DNA from: Guillardia theta CCMP2712
Taxonomy: Eukaryota; Protista; Cryptophyta
Length of the DNA: 54,797 nt
Assembly (NCBI RefSeq): GCF_000315625.1
Contig: NW_005434533.1
Location: 37,900-92,696, forward strand
Direction: 5' to 3'
The notes under the pieces were generated by a model. That model was not told the DNA's origin, made no database searches, and was given only the letters and a program-made list of their open reading frames with translations. Each line of letters begins with the position of its first letter. The stretch's first letter is position 1. A program made the translations under genes and the position numbers. This document shows positions 1 through 11,271 of the stretch, piece by piece.

Positions 1-305
1 TGATGTTCAAAAGGACTGACCAGTATGATCTGCAATTGCAGATCCCAGGAAGAAAGGAGCGGCAGACCTTCAGATTGATTCAAACAACCTCCGGTGACCG
101 GCACTTTCCTCGCACCTCCCTTCCTTCTTATCCTCAGCTCAGGACCAATCACCATCACCATAGCGCGAGCAACTCTCCGCTGGTGCAAGAGAACTTTGCG
201 TACAGGAAGAGGAAAGTGAGGAGGGCAGAGATCGAGGAGGTGCTGAAAAATGGAGCAGGGAGTTGGAAGAGACAAAGAAGCAGCTCGAGGAGTCTCGAGC
301 GAGGG
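1..305 (+). CDS. Possible exons of a hypothetical gene entering from the left edge
   Basis: Coding-like stretches bounded by GT donors (~93, ~306) and an AG acceptor (~142). No recognisable motif. Confidence 0.25.
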
Positions 306-326
306 TGAGTGGTGATTGAACATGAC

Positions 327-398
<72 letters not shown>

Positions 399-458
399 AT
401 GATGATGATGATGGAGATGATGATGGTGGAGGAGGAGGAGGAGGAGGAGGAGGAGGAG
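327..458. repeat. (ATG)n microsatellite followed by (GGA)n
   Basis: Directly visible; produces the spurious poly-M/poly-S/poly-I ORFs. Confidence 0.95.
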
Positions 459-739
459 CGGACAAAGGGAACTCGACAGGAAGGATTTGGGTGCCTGGAC
501 TCATGGTGGTGGGGTACAAATGAGGGGGTTGGATATGTGAATGTGTTTGGCAAGACCCTATCTGGGACACTATCACAATTTTCTTATAGATAAGTATATA
601 AAAACTGAGACCTCTATGGGCTAAGAAGCTTCAACCTGCAATTGTAGCAGCATGAAGGGGTATATGACAGCATTGTTGATTTTGAAAGGGGTAGGGGTTG
701 TTGGGTTACAGAATGTGAGTGACGTCGGGGATGGAGAAG

Positions 740-1122
740 AGAGAAAATGGAGAGGAGAGACAAGGGGAGGAGACGGGAGACAAGGGGAGGAGACAAGAGG
801 AGGAGACGAGAAACAAGGGGAGGAGACGGGAGACGAGGGGAAGAGAGGAGAGACGAGGGGAGGAGATGAGACGAGGAGACGAGAAACAAGAGGAGACGGG
901 AGACAAGGGGAGAGGAGACGGGAGACAAGGGGAGAGGAGAGACAAGGGAAAGAGGAGACGAGAAACAAGAGGAGACGAGAAACAAGGGGAGGAGAGGAGA
1001 GAGGAGAGGATACGAGAGACAAGGGGAGGAGAGGAGAGACAAGGGAAGGAGAGGAGAGACAAGCGAAGGAGGAGAGAGGAGAGAGAAGAGGAGGAGAGGA
1101 GAGGAGAGGAGAGGAAAGAGGA
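740..1122. repeat. Degenerate purine-rich minisatellite (GAGGAGAC/GAGACAAGGGG units)
   Basis: Repeated gaggagacg(g/a)ga(g/a)acaag(g/a)gga units with almost no T on the + strand. Confidence 0.85.
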
Positions 1123-1280
1123 GCTGTTAATACGATAGACGAGGATATTGACATGAATTGCTCGCCCAGTTTGTTGCCATGGATAGTCTGACTCTTCTTC
1201 TTCCTCTTGTTCCAGCATCGCTCCTCACGGCCTCCCTCCCGCCTCCCTGATCGCGGCCGCTCGACCTGCCGGCAGTCGTC

Positions 1281-2218
1281 ATGGTGCGAGCTGATCCAGA
1301 TCCTGTCGAGCGAGTGCGATGGACGAGCACGCGACGGCATGTGGCCGGGGGAGTGGAGGACGACGATGATGACAGGGAGTCAATGCTGAGAGGAGGCGTG
1401 CGGCTGGTGCCCGCGGAGGATTACGCTCCCCTTGCGCTCGACGATCCATGGTGGGTGAAGCTGCTGGGATTCAAGAGCCCAAGGAAAGCTGTCATGTTCG
1501 CCGCCTTCGTCATCGGCATGGGACTCTACTTCATCATCGCTGGAACCGTAAGGACACGCTCCTTCCTTCCTACATCCCTGAACTTGACCTCCTCTTCCTC
1601 CCTCCTCCCACCTCCTCCTCCATCTCATCCTCTTCTTGTTCCCCTATTCTTCTTCTTTCTCCTTGTCCTCCTCGTCCTTGCTCGCATTGACTTCTCACAT
1701 CTCGTCTTGCCTTCAGGTACAGGAACGATTGACTCGCGCCGTTCAGGTTGCTCAAAGTCTGGACATGATGGACACGTCTACTAACAGGTAGGAGGGAGAG
1801 GCGCGGGAGCAACAGCAGAAGAAGAGAAGGAGGAATAGAAACAAGAAGTGAAACTGAGAGACGAGGAGGGAAGGAGGGGGGGTAAGGGAAGAAGCCCGGG
1901 GTAAGGATGGGGGGGCAGGGGGGGGAGGCTGGAGTGAACTCACGTGATGGTGTTGGTGGCAGTCTAGAGAACTGGCTCGACATGCTTAGAGTCTCTCACT
2001 TCCGCAAGCCCCAGGGCGCGGGCGTGCAGTACGTCGACAAGCAGCTCGCACTCAAGTGCGCGGCAGAAGGATGGTCGGAGGCATGCACCCGCAAAGTGTT
2101 CGCCGAGCAGCAGATGCGGAGGAGAATGGCAGGAGGAGAAATGAGAGGGGGAGAGGGAGGGGGAGGAAGAGGAATGAGAGGGGGGGGGGAGGGGGAGGAG
2201 GAGGCGGGGGCGGACTAG
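1281..2218 (+). CDS. Hypothetical single-pass membrane protein, at least 3 exons
   Basis: In-phase splicing gives MVRADPD...AVMFAAFVIGMGLYFIIAGT | VQERLTRAVQVAQSLDMMDTSTN | SLENWLDMLRVSHFRK..., with one hydrophobic segment. The 3' end is uncertain and may continue into the next feature. Confidence 0.45.
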
Positions 2219-2271: not shown

Positions 2272-3258
2272 GGCCGCGGCGTTTTCTCAGACGAAGTTCG
2301 TCTTCCTGTTGGCATAGCGCTGCAGTTTCATCAAGCTGTTGCTCAGATGGAGGTAATGCCACCATCCTCCTCATCTTCCTTCTTCTCCCACTAGTCGTTC
2401 TCAACCTTCTCTTAATCCTGCTCATCTTCAAATTTATGCTCGTACTCCTCTTTACGTTCATACTCAATTCTCCTCCTCTTTACCTTCTTACTCATTCTCC
2501 TCCTCTTTACCTTCTTACTCATTCTCCTCCTCTTTACCTTCTTACTCATTCTCCTCCTCTTTGTCCTGCTTCTCCTCCTCCCTCTTCCCCTCCTTCTCTC
2601 GAACTTTATCATTTCCCGCATCGTGCACTTTGCTTCATCCCCTCCCATTTCTTGCTGCCTCCTCCCTCCGAATGACCCACCGCCTTCCTCTCCTTCTCTT
2701 CTCCTGACCCGCCTCGCACCCGGCAGGCGAAGGAGTGCGCATCAGGGGACATTTTTCATTATGTGTGTTACACAACATCTCGAAGACACCAGAAGAAGTT
2801 CAAAGACATGAAGAAATCGCTCAACTCCCTCATCCTCGATGTGTCCCGCGACCCTGGCGGCTCAAGCTTGCCAGGAAGTCGCAAGCAGATGCTCCTATCT
2901 TTGCTCGCTCAGGTCTGACCTGTCGTGTCTCCTCCTCTCTTCCTTGTTCCTCCTTCCAACCTCCTTCTCTCCCCTCACTTTTCCTTCCCCCTTCTCATCC
3001 TGCCATCTCTCTCTCTCTCCACACACAACGTTGTCTCTAAACGTTGCTCAGGCACTCAAGTATGGCGTCACCACTGAAATTGCTCGAAATGACCTCGACG
3101 TCAACACGGTCAGACCTGCTTTCCCTCCTTCTCCTTCTCCTTCCCCTGCCCCTTCTCCTCCCCTTCCCCCTCCTCTCGCCCGTCCGCCTTCTCCTCGCTT
3201 CCGCTTTCTCCTTCTCCTCCTCCTCCTCCTCATTATCATAGACTACACCAGCTTTTTT

Positions 3259-3309
<51 letters not shown>

Positions 3310-3478
3310 CTCCTTCGTTCCTTCTTCCCCTACTTACAACCGGCAGGCATCGATTCTTCAGGACACGCTGATTGGCATTCGAGAGAAGGAGAAGCAGCAC
3401 AGCGAGTACAACGATATCATGCTCTTCCCTGGCACCTCGCGCCTCCTCTACCGGGGCTCCTTCCTGGGCCTCAGGTGA
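2272..3478 (+). CDS. Hypothetical exons (possibly the 3' part of the preceding gene)
   Basis: GT-AG-bounded coding-like islands read ...IALQFHQAVAQME | AKECASGDIFHYVCYTTSRRHQKKFKDMKK...LLAQ | ALKYGVTTEIARNDLDVNT | ASILQDTLIGIREKEK...LGLR*. Confidence 0.35.
2461..2562. repeat. ~30-bp tandem repeat (3+ copies), intronic
   Basis: The unit actcattctcctcctctttaccttctt is repeated in tandem. Confidence 0.85.
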
Positions 3479-3953
3479 ACTTGGAGAGCGGCAGGTCGCT
3501 GGATGACGAGAGGGCAGGTTTGAAGGACAGGGCGAGATGTACTACCGCAAGGGAGATCAGGTGGCGTACAAGGGAAGTTGGAGACGAGGTGGGCGGGGAG
3601 AGAGAAGAGGAGAGGGGGGGAAGGAGAGGAGAGGAGAGGGGGGAGGGATGAGAAGCGAGGAGAAGGTCGTGACTGAAGAGGAGAGGAGAGGGGAGTACGT
3701 GACCGAGGAGTGAAGGGCGGGAGTGAAAGCTGTGAGAAGGAATTGCAGACAGCTTAAGAGGATAGAGCGGCAAGGAGGGGACTCTGGTCGTGACAGTGAG
3801 CAGGGAGGATGCACGGTTACGGGACCCTCTACGGCAGCGAAGGAGGGGAGCTTTGGAGCGGATACTTCGAGGAGGGGAGGCCGATGAGACCATGGTGGGT
3901 GGTCTGAGAGCAGCAAACAGCAAACTTTACTTGTCTTATTGTTACATATCAAA

Positions 3954-5954
3954 TCAAACGTCTACACGCGGATCCACGTACTTGGTCGCTTCGTAGAGAT
4001 AGTCCTGCTCGCCGCGGATCGGGCAGCCGATGTTGGTCAGCATGTCGTACGAACCGGCGTTGTAGCCCTTGAGCGTGAAGGGGCCGAGGTAGCCGATGAA
4101 TCCTGGCAGGGAGCCTCCACCAACGCTGATGGAGAGGTAGGAGCGACCGTCACCGACGAGGTTGTTGAGCCAGCTGACGCCCTCGATCATCTGGCCCTTG
4201 GGCGCGCGGAAGATTGAGGTAGAGATGACATCCTTGCTGCTGCTGCTGCTGAGGTCACTGAGCCAGACGTAGTTGTACGCATGACCGTCGCCATCGGCGA
4301 TGAAGAGGGTGTTGTGGTAGGAGGCGAAGTGAATGTAGCTGGGTCGAGCAGGCAAGCTGGGCTCACACCGTGTGTTGTCTGAGACCAAGGGAAGTCCATT
4401 GACCACGTCCACCTTGTAGGTGGTGAGACCGTAGGATGTGATGGGAGACTTCTTCGCCTTCGCTGCTTCATCGTCGGTGCATGCCTTGCTCACCTTGATA
4501 TGGCAAGCATCGACCGCTCCGACAGAGAACATGTACACCGAGCCGCACGGACGCACCACCGAAGCCCCACCAAGCGATTTCTGCATGTCCGTAGAGACCT
4601 CTGAGAAAGACACGAAGAACTTCTTCAGCCCGAGCTCCTTGCCCGTCGCCCCCTTGTCGTCCATGTTGTAGGCAAGTCCAGTCACAGACAGCGTGGTGGT
4701 GGCTCCGTTGACCATGGCGCAGTCCCTGGGGAAGAGGAAGCAGGCGAACTTCTCCTTCCCGCTCTTCATCTTGTAGCACTTGTCGGTGAAGGAGGAGACC
4801 TTGGAGTAGCCAGTGGGGCAGGTCTTGGAGGTGGCGGTGGGATCCACAAAGTCAGCGCCCTCCCAGTAGTCATTGAAGTAGATGTTCTTTGACGAACTGA
4901 TCTCCTTCGCCATATCGCTCTCGTTCATCGCATTGAGCTTGATCCAGGTGACCTTCTCCTTCGACAGCTGGGCTGCATACAGGGTGCCGTTCCTCAAGTC
5001 CTTGGCAATCTTGGACACAAACATGTAGAGCACGTGCCCGTCGCTGAGGTAGACAGTCTTCTTGTCAGGCATGGCAAAGGTGGAGGTAGCCTGGATGCGT
5101 CCGAGGGCGTAGCGCTTGAGGACAGAGGCGCTGAAGTCGATCTCGACGCGGCTCTCAGTCACCCACCCGTAGCTGAACTCATTGAAGCCCTTGGTTCCCA
5201 GGAAGGTTTGCATCTGCAGCGCCTTGGGAACCTGCTCGCCTCCGATGGCGGTGCACCAGGGAGTCAAGCTTCCTCCGGACGGCTGGAACAATCCAGCACC
5301 GTTGTAGAAGGGATTCGTCTGCATCCAGTAGATGGAGTCGGTGACGACTTTCGCACTCCAGGCAGAAACAGCCTTCTTCTTGCTATCGTAGGCGGGAAAC
5401 TTAAGCTCAACCATCTGAATGTCGCCCGCACTTTCGGGATCATTGACATACACGATAGCAAAGACTCGCATGCCAGTGCTGGAGATGAAGGGGATGGTCG
5501 CAGTATAGCCAACGTTGTTGCTGAAGTAAGTATCCGATCCGCTGGCATTCACGACGCAGGTTCTGTCCTTGTTTGAGCACGTTCCCATAATCTTGTCTCG
5601 AAGCACATCGTTGACTTGGCCAAACAAGATCTTGGAATTGGTGGAAGTCGCCGTCTTGTTGCAATAGTAGAATGCGCCTGCAGTGTCCTTGTACGACGTC
5701 AGTCCGCATCCAGTCTTGATCGGCACATTGAAAACGATCGGCTCCAGACCGTTGTCATCGTCGTCGTTGGAGAAGGAACCGTCACTGTATCCAAAGTTGC
5801 ACTTGCTGGTAGCAGCATACTTGGCTGCATCGGCAGCTGCTGGGTCTGAGACTGCAGTGCAATTGAGCGATGTAAGCCAGCAGGTTGTGCACTTGCGAGC
5901 GTCGACCCCAGCGAGGGCTGCCGCAACCACGAGCAAGGGCACCGCAAAGCGCAT
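3954..5954 (-). CDS. Secreted Cys-rich PhoX (DUF839)-like protein, copy A; catalytic motifs degenerate
   Basis: Intronless 666-aa ORF with signal peptide MRFAVPLLVVAAALAGVDA. PhoX-like motif order: GGSLTPW, YGWVTE, KRYALGR, MPDKKTVYLSD, LYMFVS..DLRNGTLYAA, A...GAT, CGSVY, GFIGYLGPF. Confidence 0.8.
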   Translation of the reverse strand: MRFAVPLLVVAAALAGVDARKCTTCWLTSLNCTAVSDPAAADAAKYAATSKCNFGYSDGSFSNDDDDNGLEPIVFNVPIKTGCGLTSYKDTAGAFYYCNKTATSTNSKILFGQVNDVLRDKIMGTCSNKDRTCVVNASGSDTYFSNNVGYTATIPFISSTGMRVFAIVYVNDPESAGDIQMVELKFPAYDSKKKAVSAWSAKVVTDSIYWMQTNPFYNGAGLFQPSGGSLTPWCTAIGGEQVPKALQMQTFLGTKGFNEFSYGWVTESRVEIDFSASVLKRYALGRIQATSTFAMPDKKTVYLSDGHVLYMFVSKIAKDLRNGTLYAAQLSKEKVTWIKLNAMNESDMAKEISSSKNIYFNDYWEGADFVDPTATSKTCPTGYSKVSSFTDKCYKMKSGKEKFACFLFPRDCAMVNGATTTLSVTGLAYNMDDKGATGKELGLKKFFVSFSEVSTDMQKSLGGASVVRPCGSVYMFSVGAVDACHIKVSKACTDDEAAKAKKSPITSYGLTTYKVDVVNGLPLVSDNTRCEPSLPARPSYIHFASYHNTLFIADGDGHAYNYVWLSDLSSSSSKDVISTSIFRAPKGQMIEGVSWLNNLVGDGRSYLSISVGGGSLPGFIGYLGPFTLKGYNAGSYDMLTNIGCPIRGEQDYLYEATKYVDPRVDV

Positions 5955-6094
5955 TTTCGGGGGAAGGAAAGACAGCAGGAGGGTGGGGAGGAGGAGGAAG
6001 AACAGTGAGAGGAGACTGCTACCTGCCGAGACGGGAGAAACGGAGAGGAGCAGGCGCTAGTGAAGGAGAGGAGGGAATGCCCGGGGGCGGGGGG

Positions 6095-6780
6095 ATGTAG
6101 AACCTGATTCCGATGACCCCAAGGGGGGTACTCAAGTCAGGAGAAGGTGGGTCCCCAAAGGAGTATCCGGGGGTGGGTGGTCATCGAAGTTTTTTTTTCT
6201 TGATTTTTTTATGAACCGACGTAGATCTACGTCTCTACAGGGTCTTTGTGAATGACCACCCCTACCCCCGGGATCACAGGTAACCCCCACCCCCTCCAGA
6301 CACCTGAGTGTGCCTCGAAGGTCATTGAGACTCGGGCAATGTGGACCCCACCCCCGAGACTCAACGGCTCAAGCAGTGACCCCTGCAACCCTACCCACCC
6401 ACCCTGTGCTGTACTACGTCTCTCCGATTGAGTGAGCCCTAACGGGGGTGCATGGGTAACGTGGGGTACATTAATAATTTGTGAGGGGTAGTTTGATATC
6501 ACACAAAGATGGCGCGTCCATTCTTTTTTTCTTTTCGTCATTACGATCTACTGTTGTAGTCATCGCATACGACCAAGTCGCCCACTTCCCCTCTATGTCC
6601 TCGCCAACTGCTTTTGGGTCAGGGGGTCTTGAGCCCCCTACGCCTCTTCGAAGTGAGTTTGGTTGACTTGGGGGTGGTAGAAGGTGGCAGGGAGGGGGGT
6701 GGGCAGGGTTGGAGGGGTCAAGGAGGGGTAGGGTAAGGGAGGGGGTGGGGTTGGGAGAATGACTGGATGTAGCTGAGCCC
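6095..6780. promoter_or_regulatory. Divergent promoter spacer rich in GGGGTA/TACCCC-like motifs
   Basis: Lies between two head-to-head start codons (5954 and 6917) and carries recurrent ggggta/tacccc words. Regulatory role is inferred from position. Confidence 0.5.
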
Positions 6781-6916
6781 CTTGTGATTGTGGACCTGGA
6801 TCTCCCCTTCCTGTTTCTCTTCTGCTCCGTCCTCCTCCTGACCCCCTTCCTGCTCCTCCTCCTCACCTTCCCCTCAGCTTGTTCCAACCTCTGCTCTCCT
6901 AGACCCTCCTTTCAGC

Positions 6917-8917
6917 ATGAAGGCCTGCATCGCAGCTTTCCTCCTCCTGGCGGCGGCGTCAGTCAATGCGCGCAAGTGCACAAGTTGCTGGTTGACCTCG
7001 CTCCAGTGTAGCCCTGTCGCTCCCCTGAGCAGCTCGGATGACACGACCAAGTGGGCAGCGACATCTTCCTGCACCTACGGATACAGTGATGGAACTTACG
7101 CAGTGCTGTCAGACCATGATAGTGGGTTAGAGCCTCTGGTTTTCACTGCTGCCATCTACAGTGGGTGTGGCAAGAAGTCGTACCTGGACCCGAAAGGCCC
7201 CCAGGGTTACTGTAACAAGACTGCTATCACTGGAAAGACGGACTCCAAGATCCTCTTCGGTCAAATCAACACTCTAGATGCAGCTACGATCAAAGCTGTC
7301 TGCACAAACTCGGGATACTGTACCACCGATCCAGCTGGAACTGCCGTGTATTTCAGCAACCATGTTGGCTATACTGCGACCATCCCCTTCATCTCCAGCA
7401 CTGGCATGCGAGTCTTTGCTATCGTGTATGTCAATGATCCCGAAACAGCCGGCGACATTCAGATGGTGGAGCTGAAGTTTCCGGCACTTGACAGCAAGAC
7501 CAAGAATGTTTCTACTTGGAAGCCGGTTGTTGTCACCGACTCCGTCTACTCCACGAACACCAGGGGAGTATTCCAGCCATCCGGAGGAAGCTTGACTCCC
7601 TGGTGCACCGCCATCGGAGGCGAGAAGGCTCCCGACGCTAACTCCAACACCATCAAACAATACTTCACGACAAAGTCTCCCCTTCCCACTTCCCTTAACT
7701 ACGGGTGGGTGACTGAGAGCCGCGTCGAGATCGACTTCAGCGCCTCTGTCCTCAAGCGCTACGCCCTTGGACGCATCCAGGCTACCTCCACCTTCGCCAT
7801 GCCTGACAAGAAGACCGTCTACCTCAGCGACGGGCACGTGCTCTACATGTTTGTGTCCAAGATTGCCAAGGACTTGAGGAACGGCACCCTGTATGCAGCC
7901 CAGCTGTCGAAGGAGAAGGTCACCTGGATCAAGCTCAACTCTGCGAATGAGAGCGATTTGGCTGTGGAGAGCAAGAAGACAACTACCTGGACAGACTACT
8001 GGGACGGCGCTGACTTTGTGGATCCCACCGCCACCTCCAAGACCTGCCCCACTGGCTACTCCAAGGTCTCCTCCTTCACCGACAAGTGCTACAAGATGAA
8101 GAGCGGGAAGGAGAAGTTCGCCTGCTTCCTCTTCCCCAGGGACTGCGCCATGGTCAACGGAGCCACCACCACGCTGTCTGTGACTGGACTTGCCTACAAC
8201 ATGGACGACAAGGGGGCGACGGGCAAGGAGCTCGGGCTGAAGAAGTTCTTCGTGTCTTTCTCGGAGGTCTCTACGGGCATGCAGCAATCGCTCGGTGGGG
8301 CTTCGGTGGTGCGTCCGTGCGGCTCGGTGTACATGTTCTCTGTCGGAGCGGTCGATGCTTGCCATATCAAGGTGAGCAAGGCATGCACCGACGATGAAGC
8401 AGCGAAGGCGAAGAAGTCTCCCATCACATCCTACGGTCTCACCACCTACAAGGTGGACGTGGTCAATGGACTTCCCTTGGTTTCAGACAACACACGGTGT
8501 GAGCCCAGCTTGCCTGCTCGACCCAGCTACATTCACTTCGCCTCCTACCACAACACCCTCTTCATCGCCGATGGCAGCGGGCATGACAGCAATCATGTCT
8601 GGCTGCTCGACTTCAGTGGGCAAGGAAGGCCTTTTATGCCTTCCTCAATCTTCCGCGCGCCCAAGGGCCAGATGATCGAGGGCGTCAGCTGGCTCAACAA
8701 CCTCGTCGGTGACGGTCGCTCCTACCTCTCCATCAGCGTTGGCGGAGGAACAGTTCAGAAAGGCTTTATTGGATACCTCGGCCCCTTCACGCTCAAGGGC
8801 TACAACGCCGGTTCGTACGACATGCTGACCAACATCGGCTGCCCGATCCGCGGCGAGCAGGACTATCTCTACGAAGCGACCAAGTACGTGGATCCTCTGG
8901 TGAAGCCTGCAGCTTAA
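6917..8917 (+). CDS. Secreted Cys-rich PhoX (DUF839)-like protein, copy B; catalytic motifs degenerate
   Basis: Intronless 666-aa ORF with signal peptide MKACIAAFLLLAAASVNA. Same motifs as copy A and long near-identical DNA blocks shared with it. Confidence 0.8.
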   Translation: MKACIAAFLLLAAASVNARKCTSCWLTSLQCSPVAPLSSSDDTTKWAATSSCTYGYSDGTYAVLSDHDSGLEPLVFTAAIYSGCGKKSYLDPKGPQGYCNKTAITGKTDSKILFGQINTLDAATIKAVCTNSGYCTTDPAGTAVYFSNHVGYTATIPFISSTGMRVFAIVYVNDPETAGDIQMVELKFPALDSKTKNVSTWKPVVVTDSVYSTNTRGVFQPSGGSLTPWCTAIGGEKAPDANSNTIKQYFTTKSPLPTSLNYGWVTESRVEIDFSASVLKRYALGRIQATSTFAMPDKKTVYLSDGHVLYMFVSKIAKDLRNGTLYAAQLSKEKVTWIKLNSANESDLAVESKKTTTWTDYWDGADFVDPTATSKTCPTGYSKVSSFTDKCYKMKSGKEKFACFLFPRDCAMVNGATTTLSVTGLAYNMDDKGATGKELGLKKFFVSFSEVSTGMQQSLGGASVVRPCGSVYMFSVGAVDACHIKVSKACTDDEAAKAKKSPITSYGLTTYKVDVVNGLPLVSDNTRCEPSLPARPSYIHFASYHNTLFIADGSGHDSNHVWLLDFSGQGRPFMPSSIFRAPKGQMIEGVSWLNNLVGDGRSYLSISVGGGTVQKGFIGYLGPFTLKGYNAGSYDMLTNIGCPIRGEQDYLYEATKYVDPLVKPAA

Positions 8918-8999: not shown

Positions 9000-9990
9000 A
9001 GCAGCACTGAGTAAAGCCTTTCACTCAAAATTAAGTTACTGAGTCTAACCGTCGGAGTCTGAGTCAGTATCGCTGGGCGTGACTAGGCTGATGCTTTTGG
9101 GGACAGCCTCACAGCGGCAAGTCACTGGGTGCGGATAACCGCCGTTGGTTCTCGCTGTCTTGTCTCTTCTCGCCGTGTGGTGGCCTGCAGAGTCATTGCC
9201 TCCTCAGTGATCTGGCCCAGTACGGTCACTGTGGCGGCAGCGCAGGCTGAGGGACCGGTCCCCGGGCCCGCCGGGCTCGGTGCGGCGGCGAGGCTTGCCA
9301 ATAGGTTTACCATTTGTGGGGGTGGTAGCAGTACAGAAGGGGTGAGGAGGGGGTCAGTAGCTTGTGTACCCGTGGTAAGCTATCAAATTCTTATATCGTA
9401 ATATTGGTAGGGTACCATCCTGTTCAACGAACTCATGGGTGGGGGTACTCTAAGAAAAGGTCGACAGGGGGTAGGGATGTTTTGCATCCTGTCTCGGCGA
9501 AATATGCTACAAGGGGGTTATTGTTGAGAGAAAGAGGGGGGTAGGGGTATGATATGGTAAGAATGGGTAGGGAACCACATGAGGGGGGTAGGGTATTCTT
9601 GCTGGGGTAAGGTAGTCAAAATCAGACAAGGGGGTCTACTATGTAGTGAAGTATGGGTAGGTTGTGTCTAGGGATAGCAGGGGGTAGATTTCACTGATAG
9701 TGAGGGGTGGTGATGATAAATTCGACCTCAGGTGGGGCCCTAAGAACGTAGGGTGGTATGCTGTTGATGCAGGGGTAGTTTGTGAGGAGGGGGGGGGGTA
9801 CGGGTAACAGAATTGGGGGTAGGGGGTAGTACTATCGGTCGGGTACAGGAGGACCAGGGTTTGACGGGGGTAGTGTCCTTAGGGGGTCAGAGTCAATCCC
9901 TGCAGATAGGGGGTCGTTTGAATATAAATAAGGGGGTAGGGGTGGAATTCCACAAAGGAAAGACGATCATAGGGGTAGGGTGCGGACTAG
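9000..9990. other. Intergenic composite: GC-rich CCGG/CAGT tract (~9000-9300) plus G-skewed GGGGTA tract (~9310-9990)
   Basis: Abrupt compositional switch. The same two sequence types recur elsewhere in the window. Confidence 0.6.
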
Positions 9991-10004
9991 TGGCGGGAGG
10001 CAAG

Positions 10005-11271
<1,267 letters not shown>

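What the first reader, a model, noticed from the sequence alone, without database searches (positions are those of the whole stretch)
3954..8917. Secreted PhoX-fold proteins that appear to have lost most of the Fe/Ca active site (candidate pseudo-enzyme family)
Seen: both 666-aa proteins keep PhoX-like scaffold motifs in order. Established: PhoX phosphatases bind an Fe-Ca cofactor through a Cys (xCA/CxG), the Glu of GRxxHE, an R/K-x-E motif, the Asp of PD(N/G) and the Glu of xE(V/T)TG. By-eye alignment gives QPSGGS (Cys to Ser), GRIQAT (no Glu), TLSVTG (no R/K-x-E), RPSYI (no Asp) and GQMIEG (Glu displaced); only GGE, LSD and IAD acidic residues remain. The ORFs are intact, have signal peptides and many conserved Cys. 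Inference: a repurposed, disulfide-stabilised beta-propeller acting as a surface, binding or structural protein rather than a phosphatase.
Basis: partly seen in the sequence, partly recalled or inferred. Interest (0 to 1): 0.8.

Follow-up and report, generated by a model that had tools for sequence, protein, structure and literature searches.

The report
Metal-site-less PhoX-fold secreted proteins
Two neighbouring genes of the alga Guillardia theta encode secreted proteins that keep the shape of the bacterial-type phosphatase PhoX but have lost nearly all the residues that hold its iron-calcium centre. They belong to a family found so far only in cryptophyte algae, and it probably no longer works as a phosphatase.

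Summary
Window 3954-5954 (-) and 6917-8917 (+) are two intact, intron-less, divergently oriented 666-aa ORFs, 78% identical. Each has an N-terminal signal peptide and 18-19 Cys.

Pfam, NCBIfam and PDB sequence searches find nothing directly. The PhoX relationship is nevertheless solid:
- A profile of cryptophyte sequences alone hits PF05787 proteins at E 1.7e-22.
- hhalign against a bacterial and algal PhoX-like clade gives probability 100%, E 9e-53.
- The AlphaFold model matches P. fluorescens PhoX best (Z 20.5, 424 residues aligned).

Sixteen positions are invariant in that PhoX-like clade, and at least ten of them are the same residue in solved PhoX. The window proteins keep only 4-5.

Nine cryptophyte proteins (Guillardia, Hanusia, Proteomonas, Baffinella and environmental sequences) share the loss and form one clade. 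The former ligand positions are poorly conserved among them. G. theta also carries a separate multi-exon PhoX-type gene with every ligand intact.

Best reading: a secreted, non-phosphatase PhoX-derived propeller whose role is still unknown. This is a new variant of a known kind. Full-length mRNA in G. theta was not shown. The scan had already noted the third paralogue on other DNA.

The parts
3954..5954 (-). Gene 1: intron-less 666-aa ORF (P0001), a PhoX-fold protein without the metal site
6917..8917 (+). Gene 2: intron-less 666-aa ORF (P0002), 78% identical paralogue in divergent orientation
5955..6916 (.). 962-bp spacer between the two divergent start codons, presumed to hold both promoters. 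It has no inverted-repeat symmetry.
   Evidence: the repeat arms stop inside the ORFs
5898..5954 (-). Signal peptide of gene 1 (residues 1-19). The mature end RKC..CW is conserved in the five Guillardia and Hanusia proteins, so no transit peptide follows.
6917..6970 (+). Signal peptide of gene 2 (residues 1-18)
5505..5897 (-). Cys-rich N-terminal region of gene 1 (residues 20-150). It is modelled with low confidence. Against gene 2 its synonymous sites are saturated and dN/dS is 0.16-0.42.
4188..5279 (-). Span of gene 1 holding the former PhoX ligand positions: S226 (Cys179), Q241 (Glu194), T290 (Glu273), G306 (Asp292), T425 (Glu387), S539 (Asp479), G555 (Asp496), M589 (Glu532)
7580..8674 (+). 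The same former ligand positions in gene 2: S222, K237, T290, G306, T423, S537, G553, M586
3957..4076 (-). 40-residue C-terminal tail of gene 1 (GY..GS.D.L.N.G.P...). It is absent from bacterial PhoX-like proteins, partly invariant across the cryptophyte clade, and modelled with low confidence.
4249..4871 (.). Largest gene-conversion block: 623 nt, 97% complementary to 7994-8616. Further blocks are 4898-5172/7699-7973, 3970-4104/8761-8895 and 4114-4222/8640-8748.

Best explanation
The two genes encode secreted (ER signal peptide), Cys-rich six-bladed beta-propellers. They descend from the PhoX-type alkaline phosphatases that algae share with bacteria. In an ancestor of the sampled plastid-bearing cryptophytes, one copy lost the Cys thiolate and most of the carboxylates that build the Fe3+/Ca2+ cluster, and also the Arg/Lys that contacts phosphate. 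So it can no longer assemble that cofactor or hydrolyse phosphate esters the PhoX way. The scaffold was kept under selection and gained a Cys-rich N-terminal part and a conserved 40-residue C-terminal tail. It was duplicated several times, and in G. theta it sits as an inverted pair that exchanges sequence by gene conversion. It most likely acts without catalysis, as an extracellular or endomembrane-lumen binding or structural glycoprotein. Phosphatase work is left to a separate ligand-complete PhoX-type gene on another contig. Shown: homology, fold, residue losses, clade-wide distribution, and the co-existing intact gene. Inferred: absence of activity, disulfides, secretion, and the binding or structural role.
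For: Homology: the cryptophyte-only profile A2 hits PF05787 proteins at E 1.7e-22 and 1.3e-19 and 534 proteins at E<=1e-3. hhalign of A2 against the bacterial-clade alignment A3 gives probability 100%, E 9.3e-53, 450 columns. Fold: Foldseek ranks P. fluorescens PhoX first at E 2.5e-11, with the next propellers near 1e-6. VIA-align gives Z 20.5, rmsd 3.7 and 424 aligned residues, against about 270 for other propellers. All listed ESM Atlas structural neighbours are PF05787, best TM 0.72 over 529 residues. Ligand loss: A3 aligns to solved PhoX at E 1e-20, which fixes C179, E193/194, E273, D291/292, R385, E387, D479, D496, E532 and Q550. Of 149 domain copies, 95 keep all 16 signature residues; the cryptophyte proteins keep 4-5 (read-out). 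PMC11098088 names D292 and R385 as PhoX active-site residues. Relaxation of the old site: mean pairwise identity within the clade is 0.23 at ex-ligand columns, 0.35 over all columns, and 0.52 at other bacterial-invariant columns. Not decaying genes: the ORFs are intact, and dN/dS is 0.16-0.42 where the copies are old. Orthologues come from transcriptomes of Hanusia, Proteomonas and Baffinella. The clade is monophyletic with support 0.987. An intact counterpart lies at G000:C44:240817-243337, whose exons carry every signature motif.
Against: No activity or metal-binding data exist. E267 and D297 are kept in all members. E240, D305 and D554 are kept in the long paralogues, so one residual Ca2+ site cannot be excluded. 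The model is only moderately confident (pLDDT 63), and I could not inspect its coordinates. The exact ligand list of the primary PhoX structure paper could not be read. It rests on invariance, on PMC11098088 for two residues, and on my memory for Cys179. Full-length mRNA of the two window genes was not seen in G. theta. The only RNA contigs cover the last 650 nt of gene 1 and are chimeric. The test on ex-ligand column conservation is weak (permutation fraction 0.058).
Confidence: 0.68

Rival explanations
1. It is still an enzyme but with different chemistry. The propeller funnel was rebuilt around the retained E267 and D297 (with E240, D305 and D554 in the long forms). It may hold a single Ca2+, as in other six-bladed propeller hydrolases such as lactonases, PON1 and DFPase.
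For: E267 and D297 are invariant in all nine cryptophyte proteins and in bacteria. The next best structural matches after PhoX are Ca-dependent propeller lactonases and paraoxonases, Z 15-19. New clade-invariant residues exist, such as Y546-H547-N548.
Against: The positions lining the old site are variable within the clade. That argues against a new conserved catalytic constellation there. E240 and D305 are not kept in the short paralogues. E267 and D297 are also invariant in true PhoX-like proteins and may be structural. By alignment, YHN lies in a strand before the former GED loop, not at a ligand position.
Confidence: 0.18
2. It is still a phosphatase. It would use non-homologous residues, or a ligand set that the alignment misplaces.
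For: Psip1 shows that a PhoX-like active site can hide behind very low sequence similarity (PMC11098088). The Glu two residues after the Glu532 position (E591) could in principle shift into place.
Against: Three independent alignments agree. At least eight ligand or substrate positions are replaced by Ser, Thr, Gly or Met. E591 is not conserved in the other cryptophyte proteins, which have A, S or Q there. The Cys position is S, A, Q, M, V or G across the clade.
Confidence: 0.06
3. The genes are decaying relics of a PhoX gene (unprocessed pseudogenes) with no function.
For: Very little RNA over the two genes in the runs examined. They lie in a subtelomeric setting.
Against: Three intact ORFs of 547-666 aa exist in G. 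theta. The family is conserved across four genera with transcript-derived orthologues. dN/dS is well below 1 in the old parts. Thirty-nine columns are invariant across eight diverged members.
Confidence: 0.03

Closest known systems
Pseudomonas fluorescens PhoX (PDB 3ZWU, 4A9V, 4ALF, 4AMF), the Fe3+/Ca2+ alkaline phosphatase; Pfam PF05787
   Same: Same six-bladed propeller with its extra elements, aligned over 424 residues at Z 20.5. Both are exported proteins. The scaffold motifs occur in the same order (W after the Cys site, WV.E, GR, MPD, LY.A, GAT, CG.VY, G.LGPF).
   Different: No Pfam hit. Cys179, Glu194, Glu273, Asp292, Arg385, Glu387, Asp479, Asp496, Glu532 and Gln550 are all replaced. 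It has an ER signal peptide where bacterial PhoX uses Tat export. It has an added Cys-rich N-terminal part and a C-terminal tail.
Algal PHOX, the P-starvation-induced Ca-dependent alkaline phosphatase of Chlamydomonas. Relatives here: Gonium pectorale KXZ55887.1, Myrmecia bisecta KAK9805169.1, and the G. theta gene at G000:C44:240817-243337
   Same: Belongs to the same sub-clade of PF05787 as the nearest ligand-bearing relatives. These are eukaryotic secreted proteins, thought to come from bacteria by gene transfer (PMC10735309).
   Different: Those proteins keep 16 of 16 signature residues. The two green-algal proteins named here carry two PhoX domains each. The window proteins keep 4-5 of 16 and have a single domain.
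Psip1 of marine picocyanobacteria (PMC11098088)
   Same: Another very divergent PhoX-fold protein that standard domain searches miss.
   Different: Psip1 retains almost all PhoX active-site residues and is an active Fe/Ca phosphatase. The cryptophyte family is the opposite case: recognisable homology with the site gone.
Other ligand-poor PF05787 relatives, e.g. Caenispirillum salinarum WP_404383183.1 (annotated 'alkaline phosphatase PhoX'), an Ostreobium quekettii protein, and MGnify MGYP006275996287
   Same: They also lack many signature residues, scoring 4-10 of 16. Two of them group next to the cryptophyte clade in a FastTree tree with support 0.979.
   Different: They have no Cys-rich N-terminal part and no C-terminal tail, and different residues are lost. 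The grouping may be long-branch attraction.

Membership tests
PhoX alkaline phosphatase (PF05787) | Scores above the curated Pfam gathering threshold | tested here: not met
   Zero Pfam and NCBIfam hits at E<=10 for both window proteins and for P0003-5, P0013 and P0019
PhoX alkaline phosphatase (PF05787) | Common descent with PF05787 proteins (profile-level homology) | tested here: met
   Cryptophyte-only profile hits PF05787 proteins at E 1.7e-22. hhalign probability 100%, E 9.3e-53.
PhoX alkaline phosphatase (PF05787) | PhoX-type six-bladed propeller fold | tested here: met
   Foldseek E 2.5e-11. VIA-align Z 20.5 over 424 residues. ESM Atlas TM 0.72.
PhoX alkaline phosphatase (PF05787) | Iron-binding cysteine (Cys179 of P. 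fluorescens PhoX) | tested here: not met
   S226 and S222 in the window proteins; A, Q, M, V or G in the other cryptophyte members. The role of Cys179 is from my own knowledge of the structure paper, which could not be read.
PhoX alkaline phosphatase (PF05787) | Carboxylate ligand set (Glu194, Glu273, Asp292, Glu387, Asp479, Asp496, Glu532) | tested here: not met
   Replaced by Q, T, G, T, S, G and M in P0001. Window proteins score 4-5 of 16 against 16 of 16 in 95 of 149 domain copies.
PhoX alkaline phosphatase (PF05787) | Phosphate-contacting Arg385 (Lys in the algal and bacterial sub-clade and in Psip1) | tested here: not met
   A gap or Ser at this position. Role of R385 as stated in PMC11098088.
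PhoX alkaline phosphatase (PF05787) | Fe/Ca-dependent phosphomonoesterase activity | not testable with these tools
   Needs purified protein
Pseudoenzyme (inactive homologue of an enzyme family) | Homologous to an enzyme family but lacking its catalytic or cofactor residues | tested here: met
Pseudoenzyme (inactive homologue of an enzyme family) | Maintained by selection and expressed | tested here: inconclusive
   Conserved across four genera, with transcript-derived orthologues. dN/dS 0.16-0.42 in old parts. Full-length mRNA was not seen in G. theta.
Pseudoenzyme (inactive homologue of an enzyme family) | Demonstrated lack of the ancestral activity | not testable with these tools
   Needs an assay

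The most novel reading that the evidence does not exclude
The family is a cryptophyte-specific set of variable extracellular recognition proteins. A dead PhoX propeller serves as a stable scaffold. Its loops diversify (patches with dN/dS near 1 between the two window copies), while subtelomeric inverted copies shuffle blocks by gene conversion. It could serve cell-cell, mating or prey-predator recognition.
Probability: 0.1. Interest if true: 0.8.

Novelty: new variant of a known kind. Interest (0 to 1): 0.55.

Why it matters
PhoX genes are counted in ocean and soil surveys as markers of organic-phosphorus use and of iron demand. A whole eukaryotic clade that keeps the fold but not the metal site would be miscounted by any loose homology search, and several bacterial relatives annotated as 'alkaline phosphatase PhoX' also lack many ligands. 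The family also offers a natural experiment on what a PhoX propeller can do without its Fe-Ca cluster. It comes with a built-in control, because the same alga keeps a ligand-complete PhoX-type gene. No paper found here describes a PhoX-derived pseudoenzyme.

Tried and rejected
- Direct Pfam, NCBIfam and PDB sequence searches of the window proteins: no hits.
- Cryptophyte-only profile against PDB: no hits. The link to solved PhoX needed the bacterial-clade profile.
- Single bacterial relative P0006 against PDB: only collagen-like noise.
- The primary PhoX structure paper could not be fetched. Four other papers and two word searches gave no ligand list.
- PF05787 scan of the whole G. theta assembly found nothing. 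That was a false negative caused by short exons, because profile A3 found the C44 gene.
- Expression: the RNA-labelled contigs cover only 3937-4602 and are chimeric, and raw RNA reads were near zero with only 6% of the run read. This gives no verdict on expression.
- A first read-out of ligand columns used a wrong offset and was redone.
- Pseudogene reading: rejected (see rivals).
- Plastid targeting: rejected. In the Guillardia and Hanusia members, conserved mature sequence starts right after the signal peptide, with no transit-peptide-like stretch.
- Exons of the C44 gene were inspected one by one and never joined into a spliced model. For that reason the gene is absent from the tree.
Full report
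**What is in the sequence.** Window 3954-5954 (-) and 6917-8917 (+) are two uninterrupted 666-codon ORFs facing away from each other across a 962-bp spacer. The proteins are 78% identical. The window has low coding density and no tRNA genes. The protein search names the source: a 43%-identical paralogue on the same 162-kb contig is GUITHDRAFT_166161 of Guillardia theta CCMP2712. The window is G000:C141:37900-92696. Earlier notes of this scan place telomeric retro-elements 24-30 kb to its left, so the setting is subtelomeric.

Each protein has a hydrophobic N-terminus and no other hydrophobic segment. They have 18-19 Cys and 4-5 N-glycosylation sequons. In the five Guillardia and Hanusia proteins, conserved mature sequence (RKC..CW) starts directly after the predicted cleavage site. 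This looks like a plain ER signal, not a bipartite plastid signal. A transcript-derived Hanusia phi protein aligns end to end at 66% identity, which supports intron-less gene models.

**Is it PhoX-like?** Direct searches fail:
- Pfam and NCBIfam give nothing at E<=10.
- PDB sequence search gives nothing.
- A profile of the five closest cryptophyte proteins does not reach PDB PhoX.

Indirect evidence is strong and consistent:
- The single sequence hits three bacterial proteins carrying PF05787 at E 2e-17 to 2e-11 (Pfam confirmed).
- The cryptophyte-only profile A2 hits them at E 1.7e-22 in a 5.8-billion-protein library.
- The same profile finds 534 proteins at E<=1e-3 and 299 at E<=1e-10 in an exhaustive HMMER search.
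- hhalign of A2 against A3, an alignment of 25 bacterial members, gives probability 100%, E 9.3e-53 over 450 columns.
- An AlphaFold model (pLDDT 63, pTM 0.75) has P. fluorescens PhoX as its best Foldseek match at E 2.5e-11, five orders of magnitude ahead of other propellers.
- VIA-align gives Z 20.5, rmsd 3.7 and 424 aligned residues spanning both proteins. Other six-bladed propellers align over about 270 residues.
- All listed ESM Atlas neighbours, by features and by structure, are PF05787 clusters, with best TM 0.72 over 529 residues.

**Are the ligands gone?** Profile A3 aligns to solved PhoX at E 1e-20 in two stretches (first stretch also). The chain index of 3ZWU equals the residue number. 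This fixes Cys179 (NCA), Glu193/194, Glu273 (GRFKHE), Asp291/292, Arg385 and Glu387 (RPE), Asp479 (PDG), Asp494/496, Glu532 (EVTG) and Gln550. PMC11098088 names D292 and R385 as PhoX active-site residues. The role of Cys179 as the iron ligand is from my memory of the structure paper, which is not held.

I took sixteen positions that are invariant in the bacterial clade. At least ten of them carry the same residue in solved PhoX, and Arg385 corresponds to an invariant Lys. Of 149 domain copies found by the search, 95 carry all sixteen, including green-algal PHOX proteins. The cryptophyte proteins carry four or five.

In P0001 the replacements, in P. fluorescens PhoX numbering, are:

| PhoX residue | P0001 |
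|---|---|
| Cys179 | S226 |
| Glu194 | Q241 |
| Glu273 | T290 |
| Asp292 | G306 |
| Arg385 | gap or Ser |
| Glu387 | T425 |
| Asp479 | S539 |
| Asp496 | G555 |
| Glu532 | M589 |
| Gln550 | G612 |

Two further bacterial-invariant Glu positions (E413 and E426 in P0006 numbering) are F408 and T421. Residues kept are E240, E267, D297, D305 and D554, the last as Asp where the bacterial clade has Glu. Three alignment methods agree.

**How wide is the family?** The nearest full-length relatives share the N-terminal CNKT region and the C-terminal tail. They come from Baffinella frigidus CCMP2293, Proteomonas sulcata, Hanusia phi and environmental assemblies. All lack the ligands. In a FastTree tree of 141 domain copies, the six cryptophyte copies long enough to be retained form one clade (support 0.987) on a long stem. 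Their apparent sisters are two ligand-poor bacterial-type proteins, which may be long-branch attraction.

G. theta has three copies, all on contig C141. The third lies 21 kb beyond the window and had already been noted by the scan.

**Is the old site reused?** Within the clade the ex-ligand columns are poorly conserved. Mean pairwise identity is 0.23 there, against 0.35 for all columns and 0.52 for the other bacterial-invariant columns. The Cys position alone reads S, A, Q, M, V or G. That is what a released site looks like, not a rebuilt one, though the permutation test is only marginal (0.058). Clade-specific invariant residues lie elsewhere: Y546-H547-N548, W595, N598, S605 and the tail.

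**A ligand-complete counterpart in the same genome.** The Pfam model found nothing in the assembly. Profile A3, however, found a multi-exon gene at G000:C44:240817-243337. Its separate exons encode NPCAGS, GSEEYEPD, PWEV, GRRGHE, ITDDGS, EFEKWEG, SPDN, IGEDT, GAESTS and QHPYGESD, which is every signature. Its best matches are bacterial and green-algal PHOX proteins at 40-65% identity per exon, and it barely matches P0001. PMC10735309 reports algal PHOX, including cryptophyte homologues, as a bacterial transfer and as the P-starvation phosphatase. So the alga has both a presumably working PhoX-type gene and three site-less ones.

**Selection and gene conversion.** Between the two window copies, the first 150 codons are saturated at synonymous sites, with dN/dS 0.16-0.42. 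Long central and C-terminal blocks are identical or nearly so. Short patches (residues about 237-262, 353-383 and 563-592) have dN/dS of 0.8-1.1. The DNA similarity consists of inverted-repeat blocks that stop inside the ORFs. This fits an old duplication homogenised patchwise by gene conversion, and it agrees with the scan's note s1-448864.

**Expression.** Orthologues in three other genera come from transcriptomes. For G. theta itself the evidence is poor. The contigs from runs guessed to be RNA cover only 3937-4602, and raw RNA reads over both genes are near zero, though only about 6% of that run was read. See the unexplained joint below.

**Interpretation.** I commit to a secreted, non-phosphatase PhoX-derived propeller with a binding or structural role (0.68). 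A rebuilt enzyme using the retained E267 and D297, perhaps with one Ca2+, is the main rival (0.18). A still-active phosphatase (0.06) and a decaying pseudogene (0.03) are unlikely. No paper found here holds both 'PhoX' and 'pseudoenzyme', and none mentions GUITHDRAFT_166161. It is a new variant of a known kind. The fold and family are known, the clade-wide loss of the cofactor site is not, and the new role is open.

**Unexplained.** Contigs from three studies run from 4602 into an exon that lies 8.3 kb to the left on the contig (C141:34147). The joint has canonical GT-AG signals on the minus strand, but the two pieces are in non-colinear order. An N run at C141:35229-35676 was left alone.

Noticed in passing
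window 3937-4602, joined to L006 position ~1501 (G000:C141:34147): Contigs from three studies (kind guessed as RNA) join an AG acceptor inside gene 1 (window 4602/4603, minus strand) to a GT donor. The donor ends an exon encoding ..INGAIVLKSFLTG, which looks like part of a clathrin-adaptor mu-like gene, 8.3 kb away. On the minus strand the donor lies downstream of the acceptor, so the joint is non-colinear. It could be trans-splicing, a back-splice or an unassembled duplicate. The fusion reads gene 1 out of frame.
   Followed up: partly
L015 (G000:C44:240000-244200), exons between 240817 and 243337, + strand: A multi-exon PhoX-type gene of G. theta with a signal peptide and all 16 signature residues. 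The Pfam PF05787 scan of the genome missed it, probably because the exons are short.
   Followed up: partly
window 2839-3960, + strand: A neighbouring + strand gene has a GT..AG intron at 3587-3801, seen in RNA contigs and raw reads. Its last exon runs to about 3960 and overlaps the stop codon and 3' end of gene 1 (convergent overlap). Its ORF has no Pfam hit.
   Followed up: partly
P0052 (Caenispirillum salinarum WP_404383183.1), P0021 (Ostreobium quekettii), P0137 (MGnify), P0044-46, P0066, P0072, P0152: Other PF05787 relatives in bacteria and a green alga also lack many of the 16 signature residues (4-10 of 16). At least one is annotated 'alkaline phosphatase PhoX'. Ligand loss seems to recur in this superfamily.
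   Followed up: partly
P0010, P0011 (metagenomic, bacterial-type), P0012, P0014 (green algae): These proteins carry two complete PhoX-like domains in tandem, both with all signature residues. In P0010 the two halves are nearly identical.
   Followed up: no
window 1-1500 and 9000-10500: Strong strand asymmetry (GC skew 0.4-0.48, AT skew up to 0.33), meaning long purine-rich tracts on the + strand next to the gene pair.
   Followed up: no
L006 2583-3030 (G000:C141:35229-35676): A run of N between the adaptor-like gene and the window. It is either an assembly gap or a withheld stretch. I did not probe it.
   Followed up: no
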